A stretch of DNA of 64,000 bases from Podarcis bocagei (Eukaryota), in the NCBI GenBank assembly GCA_964188305.1, contig OZ076894.1; one strand, 5' to 3'. Below, in pieces: positions 2,530-62,203 of this stretch; position 1 is the stretch's first letter; every line of letters begins with the position of its first letter. The translations under genes and the position numbers were made by a program. A model generated the notes under the pieces. That model was not told the origin of the DNA and did not search any database. It worked only from the letters and a program-made list of their open reading frames with translations.

Positions 2530-2593
<64 letters not shown>

Positions 2594-3280
2594 TATTTAT
2601 AGCCCACCCATCTGGCTGGGTTTCCCCAGCCATTCTGGGCAGCTTCCAACAGAATATTAAAATACAATAGTCTATTAAACATTAAAAGTTTCCCTAAACA
2701 GAGCTGCCTTCAGATGTCTTCTAAAAGTCTGGTAGTTGTTCTTCTCTTTGACATCTGGTAGGAGGGCGTTCCACAGAGCGGGTGCCACTACCGAGAAGGC
2801 CCTCTGCATGGTTCCCTGTAACTTGGCTTCTTGCAGTGAGGGAACCGCCAGAACGCCCTTGGCGCTGGACCTCAGTGTCTGGGCAGAATGATGGAGATGG
2901 AGAAGCTCCTTCATGTATGCTGGGCCGAGGCTGTTTAGGGCTTTAAAGGTCAGCACCAACACTTTGAATTGTGCTCGGAAACGTACTGGGAGCCAATGTA
3001 GGTCTTTCAAGATGGGTGTTATGTGGTCTCGGTGGCCGCTCCCAGTCACCAGTCTAGCTGCTGTATTCTGGATTAGTTGTAGTTTCTGGGTCACCTTCAA
3101 AGGTAGCCCCAAGCGAGAGATAACTAGAGCATGCACCACTCTGGCAAGACAGTCTGCGGGCAGGTAGGGTCTCAGCCTGCGTACCAGATGGAGCTGATAA
3201 ACAGCTGCTCTGGACATAGAATTGACCTGTGCCTTCATGGACAGCTGTGAGTCCCTTCAGGGGCACAGTTACCCCATTCA
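2530..3280 (-). mobile_element. L2-clade LINE 3' fragment with (TTA)n tail
   Basis: ORF 2675-3238 has HALVISRL...LQLIQNTAARLV...HITPILKDLHWLPV...FKVLVLTFKAL, the L2 ORF2 C-terminus; (TAA)n at 2530-2592; small internal deletions. Confidence 0.9.
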
Positions 3281-4699: not shown

Positions 4700-5385
4700 G
4701 CATGTGAAGACAGGCTCCGGCTGGCGGATTGAGTGGACACAGTGGCGTAGTGTGGGTTGTCAGCACCCGGGGCAAGGCAAGTAGTTTGCGCCCCCTAACC
4801 CGTGGATTTGCGCCCCCTAACCCGTGGATTTCCACCCCCTAACCCTAACCCCCAGATGTTGCGCCCGGTGCGGCCGCCCCCCCTGCACCCCCCACGCTAC
4901 GCCACTGAGTGGACAAGACCGATAGCGGGTCCAACGGTCAAGAAGGCAGTTTCTGCACGTGCTGCAGAAGGAAGTGAGGGACAGATGACGCTCGCCAACC
5001 TGGGAAGGTGGCCCATCTTGGAGAAGGAAAACACTGATCCTAAACCTCCCATGCCTCCCATCTTTGGGAGACAAAAAGGCTAAGAAGTAAACCTTACACA
5101 AATCCAGAGGGGAGTCCCCAAAACGATTGGATGGCATCTTGTACACCTCCCCCTGGCAACACCTGCACCCAAGCAGATGCCAAATGTATTGCTCTTCTTT
5201 CCTTTGGACTACATCAGCAAGGCTGAGAGAGGGGTCTTGTCATCTGGGCAGCCCAAGATCTCCATACACACTGCCCAGGCTTGCGCCCTGGGGAAAGAGA
5301 CTTTGGTGCTGCTAGCACAGCAGTTTCACTTCACCCTTGGAGGTGCACTCCATTGTCTCTCAAGACAGATGGATGCCAGCAACAA
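4700..5385 (+). mobile_element. Non-coding RTE-associated retroelement (SINE-like), interrupted by a hAT MITE
   Basis: GGAGAAGGAAAACACTGATCCTAAACC resembles RTE 5' UTR motifs; ends ...GACAGATGGATGCCAGCAACAA; a reverse copy of the 3' end with a (CAA)n tail is at about 47480-47550. Boundaries approximate. Confidence 0.45.
4740..4907. mobile_element. hAT MITE, 168 bp, CAGTGGCGTAG TIR family
   Basis: TIRs CAGTGGCGTAGTGTGGG / CCCACGCTACGCCACTG; perfect 8-bp TSD AGTGGACA (4732-4739, 4908-4915). Confidence 0.92.
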
Positions 5386-7978: not shown

Positions 7979-8312
7979 GGTAAAGGGACCCCTTAGGTCC
8001 AGTCGTGGCCGACTCTGGGGTTGCGGCGCTCATCTCGCTTTATTGGCCGAGGGAGCTGGTGTACAGCTTCCGGGTCATGTGGCCAGCATGACTAAGCCGC
8101 TTCTGGCGAACCAGAGCAGCGGAAACGCTGTTTACCTTCCCGCTGGAGCGGTACCTATTTATCTACTTGCACTTTGACGTGCTTTTGAACTGCTAGGTTG
8201 GCAGGAGCAGAGACCGAGCAACAGGAGCTCAGCCCGTCGCGGGGATTTGAACCGCCGACCTTCTGATCAGCAAGTCCTAGGCTCCGTGGTTTAACCCACA
8301 GCACCACCCCTG
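7979..8312 (-). mobile_element. Sauria SINE
   Basis: Minus-strand head GTGCTGTGGGTTAAACCAC...GGTTCAAATCC, tail GGGGTCCCTTTACC; TSD CCCAGTCTATTA. Confidence 0.92.
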
Positions 8313-11407: not shown

Positions 11408-11772
11408 AAGGTAAAGGTAAAGGGACCCCTGACCATTAGGTCCAGTTGTGACAGACTCTGGTGTTGTGCGCTTATCTTGCTCTATAGGCCGAGGGAGCCG
11501 GCGTTTGTCTGCAGACAGCTTCCGTGTCATGTGGCCAGCATGACTAAGCCGGTTCTGGTGAACCAGAGCAGCGCACGGAAATGCCGTTTACCTGCCTGCC
11601 GGAGCAGTACCTATTTATCTACTTGCACTTTGACGTGCTTTCGAACTGCTAGGTTGGCAGGAGCTGGGACCGAGCAACGGGAGCTCACCCTGTCGTGGGG
11701 ATTCGAACCGCCGACCTTCTGATCGGCAAGCCCTAGGCTCTGTGGTTTAACCCACAGCGCCACCTGCATCCC
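11408..11772 (-). mobile_element. Sauria SINE
   Basis: Full length with (TACCTT)n tail; TSD ATAAAYACATA. Confidence 0.92.
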
Positions 11773-16896: not shown

Positions 16897-17406
16897 TTGT
16901 TGTTGTTGTTGTTTAGTCATTTAGTTGTGTCCGACTCTTCATGACCCTATGGACCAGAGCATGCCAGGCACTCCTGTCTTCCACTGCCTCCTGCAGTTTG
17001 GTCAAACTCATGCTGGTAGCTTCGAAAACACTGTCCAACCATCTCGTCCTCTATCGTCCCCTTCTCCTTGTGCCCTCCATCTTTCCCAACATCAGGGTCT
17101 TTCCCAGGGAGTCTTCTCTTCTCATGAGGTGGCCAAAGTATTGGAGCCTCAGCTTCAGGATCTGTCCTTCCAGTGAGCACTCAGGGCTGATTTCCTTCAG
17201 AATGGATAGGTTTGATCTTCTTGCAGTCCATGGGACTCTCAAGAGTCTTCTCCAGCACAATAATTCAAAAGCATCAATTCTTCGGCGATCAGCCTTCTTT
17301 ATGGTCCAGCTCTCACTTCCATACATTACTACTGGGAAAACCATAGCTTTTACTATATGGACCTTTGTTGGCAAGGTGATGTGTCTACTTTTTAAGATGG
17401 TGTCTA
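16897..17406 (-). mobile_element. BovB (RTE) LINE 3' fragment
   Basis: ORF PTKVHIVKAMVFPVVMYGSESWTIKKADRRRIDAFELLCWRRLLRVPWTARRSN; (CAA)n tail. Confidence 0.95.
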
Positions 17407-17992
17407 TCTTTCTTTAAATGTTGTTTGTCGTTAAAAACAGACCATGGCCACCCCCTTTCCCCACAAGAAATGGTTAAAGGCAGGTCATGTTCAAATCAGG
17501 GCAAACAGTTGCTGAGCTTCCTATTTCGAGGAAGTTGTCTTCCCTCCCCTCCTGGCTTAATACACAGAAATTATTTTCTTCCCTTGCCTCCCTGTGTCCC
17601 CAACTTGAATTCCATTGGAGTTTCTCGGCCTAAAGGACTTCATTGTGGTTTTTTTCTTTGTACTCCATGCCTTTGTGCTGCGTTATTGGAGCACCCGCCT
17701 GTCTGAAAGAACGTCCCTCAAGGCGATGAATGCTGGATGCATCTCGCTTTGGGACTCGTCAGTTGTCTGCCCTTGAATCGGATGTCGAAATTGCTGTGGG
17801 AGGAGGCGATGGCGCTGCTAGAGAGTCGAGAGGGAATAGGGATTTGAATTAGGTCGCCCCCAGTGTGGCAGCAGCTAAGCTGGGATCTGGCAGGCGTTAC
17901 TTTATGGTGCCAAGGAGCAGCGATGGTTGCTGCTGATCCCTTTAAATGTCCCCAGGCATCGCTTGGCCTGCCTCCTCATTCCTACTCCATGT

Positions 17993-18172
17993 CATAGGAA
18001 CATAAGAAGCTGCAGGTACTGAGTGAGACGGTCTAGCTCAGTGTTGCCTTCGCTGGCTGAAAGTCAGGATTTCAGGGGAGGAGTCTCTCTGAGCCCTGCC
18101 TGGAGTTTCCAGGGATTGAACCCAGGACCTTCTGCATCCAAAACAAATGCTCTACCAATGAGCTACGGCCTT
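17993..18172 (-). mobile_element. Old tRNA-derived SINE with CR1-like tail
   Basis: Minus-strand GGCCGTAGCTCATTGGTAGAGCATTTG...GGTTCAATCCCTGG head; CTTATGTTCCTATG end. Confidence 0.6.
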
Positions 18173-23875: not shown

Positions 23876-23920
<45 letters not shown>

Positions 23921-24222
23921 TTATTATTTATACCCCACCCATCTGGCTGGGCTTCCCCAGCCACTCTGGGCGGCTTCCAACAGAATATTAAAATACAATA
24001 GTCTATTAAACATTAAAAGCTTCCCTAAACAGGGCTGCCTTCAGATGTCTTCTAAAAGTCTGGTAGTTGTTTTCCTCTTTGACATCTGGTGGGAGGACAT
24101 TCCACAGGGCAGGTGCCACTACCGAGAAGGCCCTCTGTCTGGTTCCCTGTAACTTGGCTTCTTGCAGCGAGGGAACTGCCAGAAGGCCCTTGGCGCTGGA
24201 CCTCAGTGTCCGGGCAGAACGA
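23876..24222 (-). mobile_element. L2-clade LINE 3' fragment with (TTA)n tail
   Basis: Highly similar to 2530-2890; ...AFSVVAPALWNVLP...FRRHLKAALFREAF. Confidence 0.9.
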
Positions 24223-25034
24223 CACTGGAAGTGTTTACCCAGCATGGAAACCGCCTCCAACCATTTCATAACTGGAAGTGGCAGTGAGCCTCTCTAGATC
24301 GATGTTACTGGTTTTGTGGGGGGGTTTTGGAGGTGCGTTCTATGATAGGCTATTGGCACAATAATAGTGGTGGACCTAAACTAGGCTATCCGCACATCAT
24401 TCCAATTCATTAGTTGTTCTGTGATGCTTCCCTAAAGTTAGTGCATTACTGCCATATGAAAAGTTGCAGGGTTTCAGCAGAGAGTTAGGGGACGTGCAGC
24501 AAGTGGAAGTGAAGCAGTGTGTGTCTACCCTGAAACTTAAGCAATATTGAAAGCAGGATCATTAGTTAAGGCTAAAACAACAAAACAATGCCCCCCTCCC
24601 ACAAACACATTTAAAAGGCCTTAGAATATTAATTGTCCAAAGGCCTGGTTGAAGAGAACATGCACCAATTAGAAGTGTGTTTCTGCCCTGAAAGCATCCT
24701 GCAATACTGAAAATCGAATCGTATATAACTGCCCCAATACCACCTTGAGCAAAGATTGCAATGAATTCTTAATAAAAAGGACACAAGGAAGAACTCTGTG
24801 TTGGGGACTGCTGTATGAGCCCAAAGCAATTGTTTGGGAGGGGGCTTCCCATGGTAACTGACTTTCCTTTCTAAATGCAGTTTTATTTTTTAGTTTTTTC
24901 CCCACAGTTTAAAACTACTGGTAGCCACAGTGCTGCTGCTGTGCCCTTGAAATTGTCAGCAGACTCAGTGGCTTTTAAACTAGAAAAAGAAAAGGAAGGA
25001 AGCCTTGCCTCCCCAAGCACAAATCAGTGTGTCA

Positions 25035-25795
25035 CAGTGGCGTAGCGTGGGTTGTCAGCACCCGGGGCAAGGCAAGTAATTTGCGCCCCCTAACCAGTGG
25101 ATTTGCGCCCCTAACCCTAACCCCCAGATGTTGCGGCCAGTGCGGCCGGTGCGGCCGGGGCCCCCTGCACCCCCCACGCTACGCCACTCTGCAGCAGTAG
25201 CTTCAAAACCCACCTTGCCAGTTCCCAAAGGGCACCATGCACAGCAAAATCCAATGCCTTTCGTTTTTCTCATTTATTTTTATTATTACTATGTATCTTT
25301 AAAAGATAAACATTCAGCGTAACAAAGAACTTAAACCGGAAGCCTTTCTTTAGCGCGCACACACACACCCTTAGGGGGATGATCCACCACTCATTTACTC
25401 GTGAGCAAGCCCGCCAAACTTGCTGACGAAACTGAAAGCCTCTTAACCCGCTGGCGAGAGGCTTAGCCGGGCCTCGCCCGCCCACCGGCTTCCTCTCGGA
25501 GGTTTTTGGGGAGCGCAGGGCCCGGTGGCGCATCGGGGTGTGGAGGCTGCCCGTGCCGGCCAGGCGTCGGTGGCGGCGTCGGCGCTGCTGCTGCGGCTGC
25601 TCCTCCTGCGAGCAGTGAGTGGAGCGCAGCCGCAGCAGCGGCGGGGCGCGCGCGCGCGCTAGGGCGCAAGGCTGGCGGTGGCTGCGGGGAGCCCGGCGGA
25701 GGAAGGAACTTGTCCCTTCCCTCTGGACTCGCACCCCCCCAGATGTTGCGCCCGGTGCGGCCGGCACCCTTGGCACCCCCCACGCTACGCCACTG
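25035..25795. mobile_element. Compound (Pack-type) hAT element: MITE + captured CpG-rich cargo + second right end
   Basis: Left TIR at 25035, damaged right TIR ending 25188, intact right TIR ending 25795; perfect outer TSD GTGTGTCA (25027-25034, 25796-25803). Confidence 0.82.
25440..25735. promoter_or_regulatory. CpG-island-like segment (cargo of the compound hAT)
   Basis: Very GC- and CpG-rich; GC boxes (CCCGCCC, GGCGGGGC), (GC)n run, GCN-repeat 5'-UTR-like sequence. Confidence 0.55.
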
Positions 25796-26286
25796 GTGTG
25801 TCAAACAGTCTGGGCTGCTTTTGCCCTAATTCTCGCTTTGCCTGAAATGCTTAGAATGAGGTGGCTGCATAAGTGAGGCTCCATTCATGTCTATATTTTC
25901 CTTATAATTTGCTTAGGATTCTTTCAATTGCAATTGACACATAAGTAGAGAGGTGAAAGTCCGACCCATAATCTCTTATTAATTCTTATTAATCGTTTGC
26001 ATCAGCAGGGCTTCTGTGTTGCAGCTGCAGGCACCAAAGACATACTTTCCTGAGCATGTAATAGTACCCTTTGGGTCTGCCTTTTCTCCTGCCTGCTGTC
26101 CTCCATCCCCCCCCCCACTTCTCAGATGATTCCTTGGAATGTTGGAACAGTGATGGTAACAGCCTCAGGGGGAGAGCTTTCAGCAGGAGCTGCCATTAGC
26201 CACAAGCGGAAGCCATAATTTTTTACATTAATGCATGGCTCATTTTGGACGGAAGTAGCAGGGAGACGCTAGCTAACCTGTAGCAG

Positions 26287-26643
26287 GGTAAAGGTAAAAA
26301 GGTAAAGGGACCCCTGACCATTAGGTCCAGTCGTGGCCGACTCTGGGGTTGTGATGCTCATCTCGCTCTATTGGCCAAGGGAGCCGGCGTACAGCTTCCG
26401 GGTCATGTGACCAGCATGACTGAGCCGCTTCTGGAGAACCAGAGCAGCGCACGGAAACGCCGTTTACCTTCCTGCTGGAGCAGTACCTGTTTATCTACTT
26501 GCACTTTGACGTGCTTCCAACCTACTAGGTTGGCAGGAGCAGGGACCGAGCAATGGGAGCTCACCCCGTCGCGGGGATTCGAATCGCAGACCTTCTGATC
26601 AACAAGTCCTAGGCTCTGTGGTTTAACCCACAGCGCCACCGTG
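26287..26643 (-). mobile_element. Sauria SINE
   Basis: Near-identical to the copies at 7979 and 11408. Confidence 0.92.
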
Positions 26644-32896: not shown

Positions 32897-33382
32897 TTGT
32901 TGTTTAGTCGTGTCCGACTCCATGGACCAGAGCACGCCAGGCACTTCTGTCTTCCACTGCCTCCTGCAGTTTGGTCAAACTCACGCTGGTAGCTTCGAGA
33001 ACACTATCCAACCATCTCATCCTCTGTCGTCCCCTTCTTCTTGTGCCCTCCATCTTTCCCAACATCAGGGTCTTTTCCAGGGAGTCTTCTCTTCTCATGA
33101 GGTGGCCAAAGTATTGGAGCCTCAGCTTCAGGATCTGTCCTTCCAGGGAGCACTCAGGGCTGATTTCCTTCAGAATGGATAGGTTTGATCTTCTTGTAGT
33201 CCACGGGACTCTCAAGAGTCTCCTCCAGCACCATAATTCAAAAGCATCCATTCTTCGGCGATCAGCCTTCTTTATGGTCCAGCTCTCACTTCCATACATC
33301 ACTACTGGGAAAACCATAGCTTTTACTATATGGACCTTTGTTGGCAAGGTGATGTCTCTACTTTTTAAGATGCTGTCTAGGT
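32897..33382 (-). mobile_element. BovB LINE 3' fragment
   Basis: ORF 32904-33347 encodes the BovB C-terminus (...QYFGHLMRREDSLEKTLMLGKMEGTRRRGRQRMRWLD...). Confidence 0.95.
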
Positions 33383-41543: not shown

Positions 41544-42057
41544 TGTTGTTGTTGTTTAGTCGTTTAGTCGTGTCTGACTCTATGTGACCCCATGAACCAG
41601 AGCACGCCAGGTACTCCTGTCTTCCACTGCCTCCCGCAGTTTGGTCAAACTCAATGCTGGTAGCTTCGAGAACACTGTCCAACCATCTCGTCCTCTGTCG
41701 TCACCTTCTCCTTGTGCCCTCCATCTTCCCCAACATCAGGGTCTTTTCAAGGGAGTCTTCTCTTCTCATGAGGTGACCAAAGTATTGGAGCCTCAGCTTC
41801 ACGATCTGTCCTTCCAGTGAGTACTCAGGGCTGATTTCCTTAAGAATGGATAGGTTTGATCTTCTTGCAGTCCATGGGACTCTCAAGAGTCTCCTCCAGC
41901 ACCATAATTCAAAAGCATCCATTCTTCGGCGACCAGCCTTCTTTATAGTCCAGCTCTCACTTCCATACATCACTACTGGGAAAACCATAGCTTTTACTAT
42001 ATGGACCTTTGTTGGCAAGGTGATGTCTCTGCTTTTTAAGATGCTGTCTAGGTTTGT
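41544..42057 (-). mobile_element. BovB LINE 3' fragment
   Basis: TNLDSILKSRDITLPTKVHIVKAMVFPVVMYG...; (CAA)n tail. Confidence 0.95.
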
Positions 42058-43885: not shown

Positions 43886-44662
43886 ATCCACCTCATGAGT
43901 TGCTGGTATCTCCTGTTTTGATGCTACCTTATTTTAGAAATTGAGCACTGCACCACTTTCATCTGAGTATCTCCAATAATGCACAGTTTATTGTAGTCTT
44001 TCTTGGTCAGAGTAGTGGTTGCGTATGGATGACATGGATTGGGGAAGTTTGCTCTGTGGCAGCTTCTTGAGTAACTGCTAATAGAATATCAATATTACTC
44101 TTGCAGTAAAGTTGGAGTGTCATTCATTAATTGCCTAATCGTTACTCCAGGTCCTTGAACAAACAGTATCTGAGAACCAGTGTGAGAAACAAGACATCAA
44201 TATCACTAAATATACATACATATATCCCATATTTAATTATAGCTGTGCACAGTAATTCCCAAGCCTTTATTTAATTCTCATTAATAACTCCCTGCACTCC
44301 GGAATGTAAATGCCAACTGTGTGCGCAAGTTTTTCAGGCTTACAGAATATATTGCAAAACAAGCCAGCACATTTTATATATAGCCCATGCGTGGAGTAAA
44401 ATGTCGGGAGCGTTGCAGTACAACAGTGAGCAGCCCTGTCCTGCACAAACAGCCACACCCTTTTCTTCCATTTGTTCACGAAATCCAAAGACTGCCTCTG
44501 CTAGAGCTATACTTGCACTAGTACTGAGAGGTGACGTGGCAAAGCGGAAGGAAAGGAAGCACAGAAGAGGAGCTAGCAATGCATAGGAGCCTTTTGCAGT
44601 ATTTTTTTTTTTAAGAAGGAAATGATGGACTTTAGGAAATGCAGAGACCTACTATGGCTTAG

Positions 44663-45107
44663 GTCCATATAGTTAAAGCTATGGTTTTCCCAATAGTGAT
44701 GTATGAAAGTGAGAGCTGGACCATAAAGAAGACTGGTCGCCAAAGAATTGATGCTTTTGAATTATGGTGCTGGAGGAGACTCTTGAGAGTCCCATGGACT
44801 GCAAGAAGATCAAACCGATCCATTCTGAAGGAAATCAGCCCTGAGTGCTCACTGGAAGGACAGATCGTGAAGCTGAGGCTCCAATACTTTGGCCACCTCA
44901 TGAGAAGACTCCTTGGAAATGACCCTGATGTTGGGGAAGATGGAGGGCACAAGGAGAAGGAGACGACAGAGGACGAGATGGTTGGACAGTGTTCTCAAAG
45001 CTACCAGCATGAGTTTGACCAAACTGCCGGAGGCAGTGGAAGACAGGAGTGCCTGGTGTGCTCTGGTCCATGGGGTTATGAAGAGTCGGACATGACTAAA
45101 CAACAAC
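44663..45107 (+). mobile_element. BovB LINE 3' fragment
   Basis: BovB C-terminal peptide; 12-bp TSD ACTATGGCTTAG (44651-44662, 45108-45119). Confidence 0.95.
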
Positions 45108-46323
45108 ACTATGGCTTAGACAGAATGATAAGTAGGTGATTGTTCCATGGGTTAAAATTCTTGTGTAACCAGGAGGATTTCTAAAATTAATTCCACAATT
45201 GGAGCATGGGCTGTAGCTTTCATTTCCTTTGCATCTTACCAACCCACACCCCATATACAAACACTGATGAAACACTGCAGTTTCCTTATATTTGTAGGGG
45301 AAGGTCTTTTCCGCGTCCTACTCATGGTGGATTTTCTGCTATGGCTAGGTTGTGGGACTCCATAGCAAGGGCAGCTCTCCTTTGACCTTATCTCTAGAGG
45401 TATTCTGTGATCTGCTCTCAGTGTTGCTATTCCACCACGCATTTGGCCAACCTGGCTCAGAAATCTGTTGTAGTGACCCTTTACTTTAAGGCTACTTCAT
45501 CTGCTGTGACGGCCCCCATAGATCTTTCTTTCACGTAGTTTCATGTGAAATTCGTAGTTTAAATTTTTTTCCTTGCTTGCTTGCCTTTTAGAGCAAGCCC
45601 TCACCAGGTTGTTAACTTTCAAGGTTAATACCATGACTTAGAGTTGAGTCCAGAAATGAATAAATAACCAATCCAATGATGAAAAGGCAGTATAATACAA
45701 TCAAACTACTTACTAGCCTCTAGTAACTGAATTTTGCACCACCTGAAATTTGGACAGGTCATCGTAATAGATTTCCCATCTCTGTGCTGGCCAGATGTAT
45801 TATGCCTCTCAGGCTTGATAATAGAACAATCTATGGCCCTTCTACTTGCTGGTTGAACATGATGAAAGCCTTGATCTGGCCAGTGGCCTATCTAGTCTAG
45901 CATCCTGTTCTCACAGTGGCCAATCAGATCCCTGTGGGAAGCACAGAAGCAGGCTCTGAACACTGCAGCACTTTGCCCATCGCTCCTCAGGCAAGACTTC
46001 TGATCAAGACAGGCCCTTTTGTTAGGCAGAATGGCAGAGAGCCTCAGGTGGCAGATACAAAGTGGTGGGGGCAGGTAGCTGCCCCTTCCTCTCCTCTCCT
46101 CTTCTTGAACCCCACTGGTCATTCCCCTTTCTCAGTGTACAGACCTGTGTGCGCCACATGACCTACCCTGCACCTCTAAGTTAGCACACCACTCTCATGT
46201 GCAGTGGAGCATGATGCGTTCCCGTTATCAGTGTCAAAGCAAGATTCAACTGCCACCCCAGTCATCTCATTTATGTGGAATGGAAAGGCATTATATTGTC
46301 CTTTCTCAAACTGGCCTTTAGAC

Positions 46324-49025: not shown

Positions 49026-50284
49026 CTGTATTTTTCCGTGTATTGGATGCCTCCATGTATAGGACACTCCCTATTTTTTGGGTCCCCAAATTAAGAAAAT
49101 GGGGGGAAATTGCCCTGACTTGTTGAAATTTTGGGGGAGAGGGTTGCCCAGAGGCTAAGAACCCCACACGTCTAACAGGCTGCCTATCACCTGTTCCCTT
49201 GTTGGCAATTGCTGAGCTTTTGGGGGGCAGAGTTGAGCTTTTTTTGGGGGGAGTGGTGAAGCTTTTCTTTCAATTACTTTTAGCACTTTTTGCCTTTCCT
49301 GCAGAGCCTCTGAACAGTATTGTTCTTGCCTCCTCCCACTCTGCCCGCCCTACGGCTGGGAGGGAGGCTGTAGGCAGTCCGTTTTTGCCGTGTGGTGTCT
49401 TTGCGTGGTTCCATTTGTGCACGGGCGGTGCAACGTTACACAGGAGGAGCATGGCGATTGAAGTAATACTCTTTGCCTTTAACACCAGCGAAACATTGCG
49501 CCTTGCGCTCCTCCTGTGTAACATTGCGCCACCCTCACACAAATGGAGCCATGCGAAGACTCTGCGCAGAAAAAACAGAATGCATGCAGCCTGCCCCACG
49601 CAGCCTCTGCCGGTAGGGCGGGCAGTGTGGGAGGAGGCAAGCAGACTGAGAATGCCCCATGGAAAGGGCGCAGAGGGGAGAGATATCTTCGATTGCCGCA
49701 GCCAACTGCAGAGGCAACGCCTCTCCCATGGGGTGCAATGTTAAAGGCCTGGGGGGTATTAATTCAATTGTCACGCTCCTCATGTGTAATGTTGCACCGC
49801 CCGCGCACAAATAGAGCCGCGTGAAGACACTGCACGGCAAAAACAGACTGCCTACAGCCTTCCTCCCCGCTGTAGGGCAGGCAGAGTGGGAGGAGGCAAG
49901 CAGACTACGGAGGCCTCGCGGCTCGCCACTGCCAGGAGCTGTGACTGCTAGAACAAGTTCCATACAGTGGTACCTCGGGTTACAGACGCTTCAGGTTACA
50001 GACTCCGCTAACCCAGAAATAGTACCTCGGGTTAAGAACTTTGCTTCAGGATGAGAACAGAAATCGCGCGGCGGTGGTGGGAGGCCCCATTAGCTAAAGT
50101 GATACCTCAGGTTAAGAACAGTTTCAGGTTAAGAACAGGCCTCCAGAACAAATTAAGTTCTTAACCCGTGGTACCACTGTATTTATTTATATATTTAATT
50201 GCTATATTCCTTGGGTAAGACGACCCACATTTTTAGACCTAAAAAATTGGGCAAAAACCTCATTTTATAGACGGGGAAATGCTG
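49026..50284. mobile_element. Larger Tc2/pogo-like non-autonomous element with internal inverted repeats and a nested MITE
   Basis: TA|CTGTATTTTTCCGTGTAT left end; degenerate right end ATAGACGGGGAAATGCTG|TA; three internal copies of a roughly 135-bp unit. Confidence 0.65.
49965..50179. mobile_element. Tigger/pogo-like MITE (nested)
   Basis: Family TIRs, TA flanks. Confidence 0.9.
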
Positions 50285-61145: not shown

Positions 61146-62203
61146 ATTTTAAATTTTATTTATGCTTTCCAGATGGATAAATTTCCCTAATTTTACAATC
61201 GTAACATTTCAAACTTGTCTTCCTTCCCCCTCTTTCTGCAGTTCCTTCAATTTATTTTTAGTATCTTCTGCATATCCAAATTAACTTAATATGCTCATTT
61301 ATTCATCTACTTTAAATATATACTCTTATCAAACTGCAGGTTATTACAATAATCCTGCCAGTGTTCTTATCTGTTTACAATCTATCTGTAAATATTCAAC
61401 AAACCGTTTCCATAACATTCTTGCCACTGTAGTAGCGCACATGAATAAGTTTCTGTACAGTTTTGGTAGTTCCGTCCCTATAATTCCCAAAAGAAAAGTT
61501 TCTGGTTTTGTTTTGTTTTGTTTTGTTTTACAAACATCATTTTAAACATCCTTTTCAATTCATTATATATTTCCCAGTAAGCTTTAACCTTCTCCCTTCT
61601 TGGGAGAAAAGCAATGACAAACCTAGACAGCATCTTAAAAAGTAGAGACATCACCTTGCCAACAAAGGTCCGTATAGTTAAAGCTATGGTTTTCCCAGTA
61701 GTGATGTATGGAAGTGAGAGCTGGACTATAAAGAAGGCTGATCGCCGAAGAATTGATGCTTTTGAATTATGGTGCTGGAGGAGACTCTTGAGAGTCCCAT
61801 GGACTGCAAGAAGATCAAACCTATCCATTCTGAAGGAAATGAGCCCTGAGTGCTCACTGGAAGGACAGATCCTGAAGCTGAGGCTCTAATATTTTGGCCA
61901 CCTCATGAGAAGAGAAGACTCCCTGGAAAAGACCCTGATGTTGGGAAAGATGGAGGGTACAAGGAGAAGGTGATGACAGAGGACGAGATGGTTGGATAGT
62001 GTTCTTGAAGCTACCAGCATGAGTTTGACCATACTGCGGGAGGCAACGGAAGACAGAAGTGCCTGGCATGCTCTGGTCCATGGGGCCACGAAGAGTTGGA
62101 CACGACTAAGCTACTAAACAACAACAAGCTTTAACCTTACTACAAGACCACAACATATGATAAAAAAGAACCTTCTTTCTCTTTACATTTCCAACATTTG
62201 ATT
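61146..62203 (-). mobile_element. L1 LINE 3' fragment, interrupted by BovB
   Basis: Removing BovB restores KCWKCKEKEGSF-(frameshift)-YHMLWSCSKVKAYWEIYNELKRMF, a CCHC zinc knuckle typical of the L1 ORF2 C-terminus. Confidence 0.75.
61592..62125 (+). mobile_element. BovB LINE 3' fragment
   Basis: MTNLDSILKSRDITLPTKVRIVKAMVFP...; 13-bp TSD AAGCTTTAACCTT (61579-61591, 62126-62138). Confidence 0.95.

What the first reader, a model, noticed from the sequence alone, without database searches (positions are those of the whole stretch)
25027..25803. Pack-type hAT transposon that appears to have captured a host CpG-island promoter and first exon
Seen: a complete copy of the 4740-4907 MITE lies at 25035-25188, but its right TIR lacks the terminal G (GCCACT|C instead of GCCACTG) and no TSD follows it. 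After about 545 bp of unrelated DNA there is a second, intact right end of about 60 bp (25736-25795). This is followed immediately by GTGTGTCA, identical to the 8 bp before the left TIR, so the whole 761 bp inserted as one unit (a chance match is about 4^-8). Read on the minus strand, the cargo looks like a gene 5' end: GC boxes, a (GC)n run, an Inr-like CTCACTG, a GCN-repeat leader, an ATG at 25533 (MRHRALRSPKTSERKP), a donor-like CCG|GTGGGC at 25486, then AT-richer intron-like DNA. Established: Pack-MULE and Pack-CACTA elements in plants capture GC-rich 5' gene fragments, and hAT elements make 8-bp TSDs. Inference: the transposase skipped the damaged end and mobilised flanking host DNA, making this a vertebrate hAT system that shuffles promoters or exons.
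Basis: partly seen in the sequence, partly recalled or inferred. Interest (0 to 1): 0.85.

Follow-up and report, generated by a model that had tools for sequence, protein, structure and literature searches.

The report
Compound hAT transposon carrying CpG-island DNA
A 761-base jumping-gene unit in a wall-lizard-type genome holds a small hAT transposon with a dead right end, 547 bases of promoter-like CpG-island DNA and a spare right end, so it is one more, unusually informative, example of transposon-mediated DNA capture, a process already known in animals.

Summary
A perfect 8-bp duplication, GTGTGTCA, flanks 25035-25795. Inside lie three parts:
- a near-complete MITE (25035-25188) whose right end reads GCCACTC instead of GCCACTG;
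- 547 bp that occur only once in the window (25189-25735);
- a 60-bp second right end (25736-25795).

The GC-rich half of the cargo is a sharp CpG island (GC 73%, CpG o/e 0.91, against 0.17 and 0.41 in the flanks) that ends exactly at the transposon ends.

The block is one transposon-bounded unit, and the cargo most likely was once the flank of the inner MITE. No donor gene could be found, and the tools hold no lizard genome to search. The "first exon" rests on a 16-codon ORF and a weak splice donor, and even the gene's direction is open.

Two origins cannot be separated here:
- movement as a hybrid of two neighbouring insertions (end bypass or macrotransposon; favoured);
- repair synthesis that copied another MITE copy and ran on into its flank.

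This scan has already noted more than a dozen Pack-hAT elements elsewhere in this genome, several with cargo verified by other agents. Pack-TIR elements in animals are published (PMC8277862). I file it as a new member of a known kind, of moderate interest for the preserved dead inner end.

The parts
25027..25034 (.). Left copy of the 8-bp target-site duplication GTGTGTCA
   Evidence: identical to 25796-25803. These are the only two + strand occurrences in the window. P about 1.5e-5 per position.
25035..25051 (+). Outer left TIR, CAGTGGCGTAGCGTGGG (17 nt; begins CAGTG, which fits the hAT motif YARNG)
   Evidence: 0 mismatches., I3: 100% complementary to 25779-25795.
25035..25188 (+). MITE copy A: a complete non-autonomous element apart from the last base of its right TIR
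   Evidence: aligns end to end with 4740-4907 and is 96% identical over the first 79 nt; it has 3 copies of the 9-bp unit TGCGGCCGG, where B and the reference have 2.
25173..25189 (-). Inner right TIR with a terminal lesion. It reads ...CGCCACTC instead of ...CGCCACTG, which can also be read as a CT duplication (CCACTCTG). No TSD follows it.
   Evidence: 1 mismatch, at the terminal base.
25189..25430 (.). Cargo, AT-richer half (GC 43%). Intron-like if the gene reads on the minus strand; upstream promoter region (CCAAT 25251, ETS core 25336, TGACG 25424) if it reads on the + strand.
25431..25735 (.). Cargo, CpG-island half: 305 bp, GC 73%, 37 CpG, o/e 0.91. It holds a (GC)n run, GCN repeats forming an 18-nt inverted repeat, and the only minus-strand ATG in this half (25533).
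   Evidence: (I2).
25486..25533 (-). Candidate 16-codon start of an ORF (MRHRALRSPKTSERKP), followed by a GT at 25485-25484. Unverified.
   Evidence: This frame has the coding-like pattern GC3 0.82 > GC1 0.74 > GC2 0.64 and no stop across the GC half, but no homologue was found.
25736..25795 (+). Right-end fragment B: the last 60 bp of a family member, with an intact TIR (25779-25795). Its junction with the cargo lies in a run of C, where ACCCCC is shared with the MITE.
25796..25803 (.). Right copy of the target-site duplication GTGTGTCA
4740..4907 (+). Reference simple copy of the same MITE family, flanked by its own 8-bp TSD AGTGGACA (4732-4739 and 4908-4915)

Best explanation
The block 25035-25795 is a hybrid, non-autonomous hAT element.

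At an earlier locus, two members of this GC-rich MITE family had inserted about 550 bp apart, in the same orientation, into a CpG island. hAT elements favour open, promoter-proximal DNA (established knowledge). The left copy (A) lost the use of its right end through a lesion at the terminal base. The right copy (B) was reduced to its last 60 bp, as happens after aberrant excision or incomplete repair. Transposase then paired A's left end with B's right end and cut and pasted everything between them into the present site, making the 8-bp duplication GTGTGTCA. On this reading the 547 bp of cargo are the chromosomal DNA that lay between the two insertions.

Shown here:
- the unit, its ends and its TSD;
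- the lesion at the inner end;
- that the two right ends are different copies;
- the CpG-island nature of the cargo and its single-copy status in the window.

Inferred:
- the donor arrangement;
- that the unit moved with its cargo;
- that the cargo is a gene's 5' region.
For: 1. An exact 8-bp TSD sits immediately outside the outer TIRs and nowhere else on that strand of the window. No TSD follows the inner end.
2. The one defect among the three TIR copies of the unit (51 positions) falls on the terminal base of the inner right end, the base a transposase must cleave at. If the position of a single lesion were random, it would fall within the last 1-3 bases of that end with a chance of only 2-6% (my arithmetic).
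3. The cargo starts exactly at the boundary of A, as a former flank would.
4. The right ends of A and B are distinct copies: 88% identity over 48 nt, plus one extra 9-bp repeat unit in A. B is nearer to the reference copy at 93%.
5. The CpG island is confined to the unit: CpG o/e 0.91 inside against 0.17 and 0.41 outside, and GC drops to 0.38-0.43 at both edges. The island therefore came with the element.
6. This exact route has been proposed from live observation in plants: closely spaced direct insertions plus complementary end loss give a hybrid Pack element (PMC6379663). Ac macrotransposons show a hAT transposase can do it (PMC9910405). P-element flank capture is the animal precedent (Tsubota and Huong 1991, cited in PMC8277862).
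7. Other agents of this scan report the same lizard genome to be full of hAT elements with host 5' cargo. These are leads only and were not checked here.
Against: - Only one copy is visible, so movement with the cargo on board is not demonstrated.
- The model needs several prior events at the donor locus: two insertions, a terminal lesion and a truncation.
- The cargo/B junction lies in a C-run with 5-6 nt of shared sequence, the signature expected of template switching or microhomology-mediated repair.
- No donor locus, empty site or second copy could be looked for. Metagenome scans and protein routes found nothing, and the tools hold no lizard genome.
- In animals, most single-copy Pack-TIRs are attributed to gap filling and not to end bypass (PMC8277862).
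Confidence: 0.45

Rival explanations
1. Repair-synthesis capture (gap filling or FoSTeST). A plain MITE sat at this site, or was in transit. A break in it, or its excision, was repaired by copying a different, homologous MITE copy elsewhere. Synthesis ran off the end of that copy into its flank for 547 bp. The new strand then re-annealed to the resident right end through the C-run microhomology. On this reading the cargo is still the former flank of copy A, but no two-element donor and no skipped end is needed.
For: - The cargo/B junction sits in a C-run sharing ACCCCC with the MITE.
- The left 120 bp are in perfect register with a normal MITE, as a homology-driven invasion would give.
- The two right ends differ, as expected if one came from the resident copy and the other from an ectopic template.
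- One event suffices.
- Gap filling is the mechanism favoured for single-copy Pack-TIRs in animals (PMC8277862).
Against: - It gives no reason for the lesion at exactly the terminal base of the inner end. That must then be a coincidence of a few percent.
- Typical gap-filling products have internal breakpoints without duplicating a whole element end.
Confidence: 0.3
2. The 'cargo' is not host DNA but the internal, subterminal sequence of a longer (autonomous or long non-autonomous) member of the same hAT family, for instance its own promoter and first exon next to the right end. The unit would then be a rearranged transposon without any host capture.
For: - The MITE itself is GC-rich and CpG-rich (GC 67%, o/e 0.68-0.78), so a GC-rich subterminal region would be in character.
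- Read on the minus strand, the promoter-like and ATG part sits just inside a transposon end, where hAT transposase genes begin (general knowledge).
- No host gene could be matched to it.
Against: - There is no second copy of any part of the 547 bp in a window that holds two loci of the family.
- No hAT transposase domain was found in any ORF of 70 codons or more in the window.
- The 16-codon ORF and the 87-codon read-through ORF match nothing.
- Other agents found unrelated, verified host cargos in what appears to be the same family (unchecked here).
- It does not explain the complete copy A in front of the cargo.
Confidence: 0.1
3. Native promoter with two independent insertions: the CpG island belongs to this locus, and copies A and B inserted separately on either side of it.
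For: CpG islands attract hAT insertions (general knowledge), and two insertions this close together are possible.
Against: - Copy A has no TSD of its own. The 8 bp before A reappear exactly after B, with a chance of about 1.5e-5.
- B has no left end.
- GC and CpG content fall to background exactly at the outer TIRs.
Confidence: 0.02

Closest known systems
Pack-TIR / Pack-hAT elements of animals (Tan et al. 2021, PMC8277862), e.g. Pack-hAT-N8_XT carrying the CAPSL 5' UTR in Xenopus tropicalis
   Same: Non-autonomous hAT ends and an 8-bp TSD enclose a few hundred bp of non-transposon, GC-rich, 5'-type DNA in a vertebrate.
   Different: Here a whole extra element end, with a dead terminal base, is kept between the left part and the cargo. 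The parental copy is not identified, so formal Pack-TIR status is unproven. Lizards are not named in that paper's main text ('lizard' and 'Anolis' each occur 0 times).
Hybrid Pack-CACTA model (Catoni et al. 2019, PMC6379663): neighbouring direct insertions plus complementary loss of one end each
   Same: The architecture is what that model predicts: the left element has an unusable right end, the right element is reduced to its right end, and chromosomal DNA lies between them, all inside one TSD.
   Different: The superfamily differs (hAT, not CACTA) and so does the kingdom. The left element lost only one base and not a terminal segment. Nothing here was observed in real time.
Ac/fAc macrotransposons and composite insertions of maize (Huang and Dooner 2008; Wang et al. 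2022; PMC9910405)
   Same: A hAT transposase uses the 5' end of one element and the 3' end of another in direct orientation, moves the DNA between them, and leaves an 8-bp TSD.
   Different: The maize cases span kilobases to tens of kilobases and are shown genetically. This one is 761 bp, built from MITEs, and inferred from a single sequence.
End bypass / transduction: P-element flank capture (Tsubota and Huong 1991), L1 3' transduction, Helitron terminator bypass
   Same: The element's proper end is passed over, and flanking DNA up to the next usable end travels with it.
   Different: The substitute end here is a genuine family right end, not a chance look-alike. The mechanism is cut-and-paste, not copy-out.
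Pack-MULEs of rice and other plants
   Same: Capture of GC-rich 5' gene fragments between TIRs.
   Different: Different superfamily, with 9-10-bp TSDs and long TIRs. The parental genes are known for those elements, but not here.

Membership tests
hAT superfamily (non-autonomous member) | 8-bp target-site duplication | tested here: met
   GTGTGTCA flanks 25035-25795 and AGTGGACA flanks 4740-4907.
hAT superfamily (non-autonomous member) | Short TIRs (about 10-25 bp) beginning with YARNG | tested here: met
   The TIR is 17 nt, CAGTGGCGTAGCGTGGG, and starts CAGTG. The YARNG consensus is from my own knowledge.
hAT superfamily (non-autonomous member) | Target preference nTnnnnAn | tested here: inconclusive
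   GTGTGTCA has T at position 2 but C at position 7. AGTGGACA fits neither position. Two sites are too few, and the preference is weak in any case.
hAT superfamily (non-autonomous member) | Mobilised by a transposase with a hAT dimerisation domain whose element shares these ends | not testable with these tools
   No Pfam family was found in any ORF of 70 codons or more in the window.
Pack-TIR (transduplicating TIR element) | Non-transposon DNA enclosed by the two ends of one TIR family inside one TSD | tested here: met
   The 547 bp have no similarity to the MITE or to any other repeat in the window. For the ends and the TSD, see the evidence for the first two hAT rows (8-bp TSD; short TIRs).
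Pack-TIR (transduplicating TIR element) | A parental copy of the enclosed DNA exists elsewhere in the genome, outside any element | not testable with these tools
   No lizard genome is searchable. The 25-mer scans of metagenome contigs were blank and the protein routes were blank.
Hybrid element / macrotransposon (two-element origin) | The two outer ends derive from different element copies | tested here: inconclusive
   The inner and outer right ends are clearly different copies: 88% identity, and 3 versus 2 units of the 9-bp repeat. This is as required, but repair from an ectopic copy predicts the same.
Hybrid element / macrotransposon (two-element origin) | A donor locus with both elements in direct orientation, or several copies of the compound with different TSDs | not testable with these tools
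   This needs a BLASTN search of the source genome.
CpG island (Gardiner-Garden and Frommer criteria) | At least 200 bp, GC at least 50%, CpG observed/expected at least 0.6 | tested here: met
   25431-25735: 305 bp, GC 73%, o/e 0.91. The whole window has o/e 0.31.
Gene 5' end (promoter plus first exon) | Homology of the exon to a known gene product | tested here: not met
   There were 0 hits for the frame holding the ATG, both in the 5.8-billion-cluster search and in the 1.84-billion-representative search. A 16-codon exon would, however, be below detection.
Gene 5' end (promoter plus first exon) | Transcription start and splicing evidence | not testable with these tools
   Only motif-level hints exist, and they point both ways.

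The most novel reading that the evidence does not exclude
This copy is a preserved intermediate that shows how the lizard's Pack-hAT family gets its cargo. MITEs pile up in CpG-island promoters. One copy loses its terminal base, and the transposase then reaches for the next right end and carries the promoter or first exon away. That would give natural, sequence-level evidence in a vertebrate for the neighbouring-insertion (end-bypass) route to gene-fragment capture. It would also explain why the cargos of this family are so often gene 5' ends.
Probability: 0.4. Interest if true: 0.55.

Novelty: new member of a known kind. Interest (0 to 1): 0.38.

Why it matters
How cut-and-paste transposons pick up host DNA is still argued. 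The candidates are gap filling, replication template switching and the joint use of ends from two neighbouring elements. Most captured elements have lost the traces of their origin. This one keeps the old boundary: an inner right end with a single-base terminal defect, directly followed by the cargo. The donor locus, once found in the genome, should therefore tell the models apart in one comparison. If the hybrid route is confirmed, it links the insertion preference of hAT elements for promoters to the 5' bias of their cargo. It would also add a young, possibly still active vertebrate system for moving CpG-island promoters. The high CpG content (o/e 0.91) means the cargo is either very recent or still unmethylated, and so possibly active as a promoter at its new site.

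Tried and rejected
1. Donor by protein homology. The 168-codon frame across the cargo gave 0 hits. The frame with the ATG plus the B end gave 0 hits among 1.84 billion representatives. An exact look-up of the 87-codon ORF found nothing on record.
2. More family copies through a MITE-encoded peptide: 0 hits.
3. DNA scans of metagenome contigs with a cargo 25-mer and a MITE 25-mer: 0 matches each. That collection is unlikely to hold lizard DNA, so the blanks mean little.
4. Structured RNA in or near the unit: nothing credible in Rfam.
5. Host gene, sought so that orthologous loci could be fetched for an empty-site test. No Pfam family was found in any of the 261 ORFs of 70 codons or more outside the unit. 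The window looks intronic or intergenic and rich in repeats.
6. Paralogous empty site: the target lies in unique DNA.
7. Extension of B into a longer degenerate MITE: rejected (P = 0.27-0.29).
8. Retroposition of the cargo: rejected, because neither strand has a poly(A) and the cargo has no TSD of its own.
9. Literature search for the TIR sequence: no paper holds it.
10. The last protein search was left unused. The remaining frames have no ATG, and the length window (0.55-1.75 times the query) would exclude any normal gene product.

Full report
**1. What is in the sequence**

- GTGTGTCA lies at 25027-25034 and again at 25796-25803. On the + strand of the 64-kb window this 8-mer occurs only at those two places. 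A first-order Markov model gives 1.5-1.8e-5 for finding it at one stated position.
- Directly inside these copies are the 17-nt inverted repeats CAGTGGCGTAGCGTGGG (25035-25051) and their exact complement (25779-25795) (I3).
- The same search found a third TIR copy at 25173-25189 with one mismatch, at the terminal base: the DNA reads ...CGCCACTC where every other end reads ...CGCCACTG.
- It also found both ends of a plain copy at 4740-4907, which has its own 8-bp duplication AGTGGACA. In all there were five matches against 0.05 expected.

**2. Anatomy of the unit**

*Copy A (25035-25188).* It aligns from its first base to its last-but-one base with the 168-bp copy at 4740. Identity is 96% over the first 79 nt. 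The lower overall figure (79% over 177 columns) comes mostly from copy-number differences in two internal tandem repeats: a roughly 22-bp unit on the left, and the 9-bp unit TGCGGCCGG on the right, of which A has three.

*The 547-bp cargo (25189-25735).* A sensitive BLASTN against the window finds nothing but the segment itself and one short internal inverted GCN-repeat match.

*Fragment B (25736-25795).* These are the last 60 bp of a family member, 93% identical to the reference right end. They are only 88% identical to A's right end, with two and not three 9-bp units. Homology to the MITE does not continue to the left of the C-run at 25729-25735 (local alignment against shuffles, P = 0.27-0.29). 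B is therefore a bare right-end fragment. Its junction with the cargo lies in a run of C in which ACCCCC is shared with the MITE.

*The lesion.* It can be read in three ways:
- loss of the terminal G;
- a G-to-C change;
- a CT duplication (CCACTCTG).

In each reading the last three bases of the inner end are abnormal, while the other 50 TIR positions in the unit are intact.

**3. The cargo**

- The right-hand 305 bp (25431-25735) have GC 73%, 37 CpG and CpG o/e 0.91. The left-hand 242 bp have GC 43%.
- The 2 kb on either side of the unit have o/e 0.17 and 0.41, and the whole window 0.31.
- GC falls to 0.38-0.43 immediately outside the outer TIRs.

The island is thus confined to the unit and came with it. 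Its undecayed CpG content means either a very recent arrival or continued protection from germline methylation.

The "promoter plus first exon" reading on the minus strand is compatible with the sequence but weak.
- The ATG at 25533 is the only one in the GC half. It opens 16 codons before a GT at 25485.
- That frame has the coding-like pattern GC3 > GC1 > GC2 and no stop.
- There is only one canonical GGGCGG box, and it lies after the supposed donor. There is no TATA box.
- The + strand offers CCAAT (25251), an ETS core (25336) and TGACG (25424) just upstream of the island.

The direction of any gene is therefore open. No Rfam family matches.

**4. Attempts to find the source**

The tools hold no lizard genome, so I tried indirect routes.
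- Protein searches with the cargo frame, an exact ORF look-up and a MITE peptide were all blank.
- Two metagenome scans were blank.
- No Pfam domain occurs in any ORF of 70 codons or more in the window, so no host gene could be used to fetch orthologous loci.
- The target site is unique DNA with no paralogous empty site.

The three decisive facts therefore remain untested: the donor locus, further copies of the unit, and the state of the orthologous site.

**5. What it most likely is**

*Native promoter with two separate insertions.* The TSD excludes this, at about 1.5e-5.

*The robust inference.* The cargo begins exactly at the boundary of a complete element. The simplest reading, shared by the two leading models, is that the 547 bp were once the chromosomal flank of copy A at another locus.

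*Model 1 (favoured, 0.45).* This is the hybrid or neighbour-pair route. Two insertions lay in direct orientation about 550 bp apart in a CpG island. A's right end was dead and B was reduced to its right end. Transposase joined A's left end with B's right end and moved the lot. This is the route proposed from live Pack-CACTA mobilisation in Arabidopsis (PMC6379663). It is also the behaviour of Ac macrotransposons (PMC9910405) and the end-bypass capture seen with a P element (Tsubota and Huong 1991, via PMC8277862). Its main support is that the unit's one TIR defect sits on the very base the transposase must cut, a 2-6% coincidence otherwise.

*Model 2 (0.30).* This is repair synthesis. A plain MITE at this site, or in transit, was repaired from a different MITE copy. 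Synthesis ran on into that copy's flank and re-annealed through the C-run. It needs fewer events, it fits the microhomology at the cargo/B junction, and it is the mechanism preferred for single-copy Pack-TIRs in animals (PMC8277862). It leaves the terminal lesion unexplained.

*Third possibility (0.10).* The 547 bp are internal sequence of a longer family member. I could not exclude this because no autonomous element was available.

**6. Relation to what is known, and to this scan**

Pack-TIR elements are catalogued in 100 animal genomes: 370 in all, of which 208 are hAT. They include a multicopy frog hAT that carries a 5' UTR (PMC8277862).

Notes from this scan describe the same genome as a wall-lizard (Podarcis-type) genome with many hAT elements carrying CpG-island or first-exon cargo. 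Other agents report several of these cargos as verified (SIX5, PACS1, GNAL, CDAN1, CDK5R2, ARHGEF33), and some copies are reported at more than one site. I did not check those claims, and I cannot confirm that they concern the same TIR family. They lower the novelty of the general claim.

What this copy adds is its architecture. The retained inner end marks the old element/flank boundary and makes the origin question directly answerable once the genome is searched.

**7. Verdict**

- The element is a new member of a known kind, of moderate interest.

Noticed in passing
window 4732-4915: A plain 168-bp copy of the same MITE family with a perfect 8-bp TSD, AGTGGACA. Both TSDs of the family in this window end in CA and fit the usual hAT target consensus nTnnnnAn poorly.
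   Followed up: partly
window 16903-17411, 32916-33382, 41587-42057, 44661-45109, 61617-62127: Five copies, on both strands, of a 250-500-bp repeat at 93-96% identity. The ORF at 17051-17374 (-) looks to me like the C-terminal tail of a LINE reverse-transcriptase protein (BovB/RTE-like, from memory only). Pfam gave no hit at E <= 0.001.
   Followed up: partly
window 18109-18165 (-): A tRNA-like match in Rfam (RF00005, 35.9 bits, model positions 8-63), probably the head of a tRNA-derived SINE and not a working tRNA gene.
   Followed up: no
window 2531-2844 and 23876-24175: Two copies (93%) of a repeat that starts with a long (ATA)n run. One lies about 850 bp to the left of the insertion site.
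   Followed up: no
window 7990-8308, 11515-11764, 26318-26640: A GC-rich repeat family (91-92% between copies). It accounts for several of the 'CpG-island-like' segments of the window, including the one about 500 bp to the right of the unit. Those segments are repeats, not promoters.
   Followed up: no
window 49317-49469 / 49756-49908: An inverted pair of 153-nt arms (86% complementary, 286 nt apart) inside a GC-rich stretch. ORFs on both strands there share peptide motifs, which suggests two head-to-head copies of one repeat.
   Followed up: no
window 25583-25600 / 25626-25643: Inside the cargo, GCN-repeat arms form an 18-nt inverted repeat (94% complementary, 25-nt loop). It could fold as a hairpin in a transcript read from either strand.
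   Followed up: no
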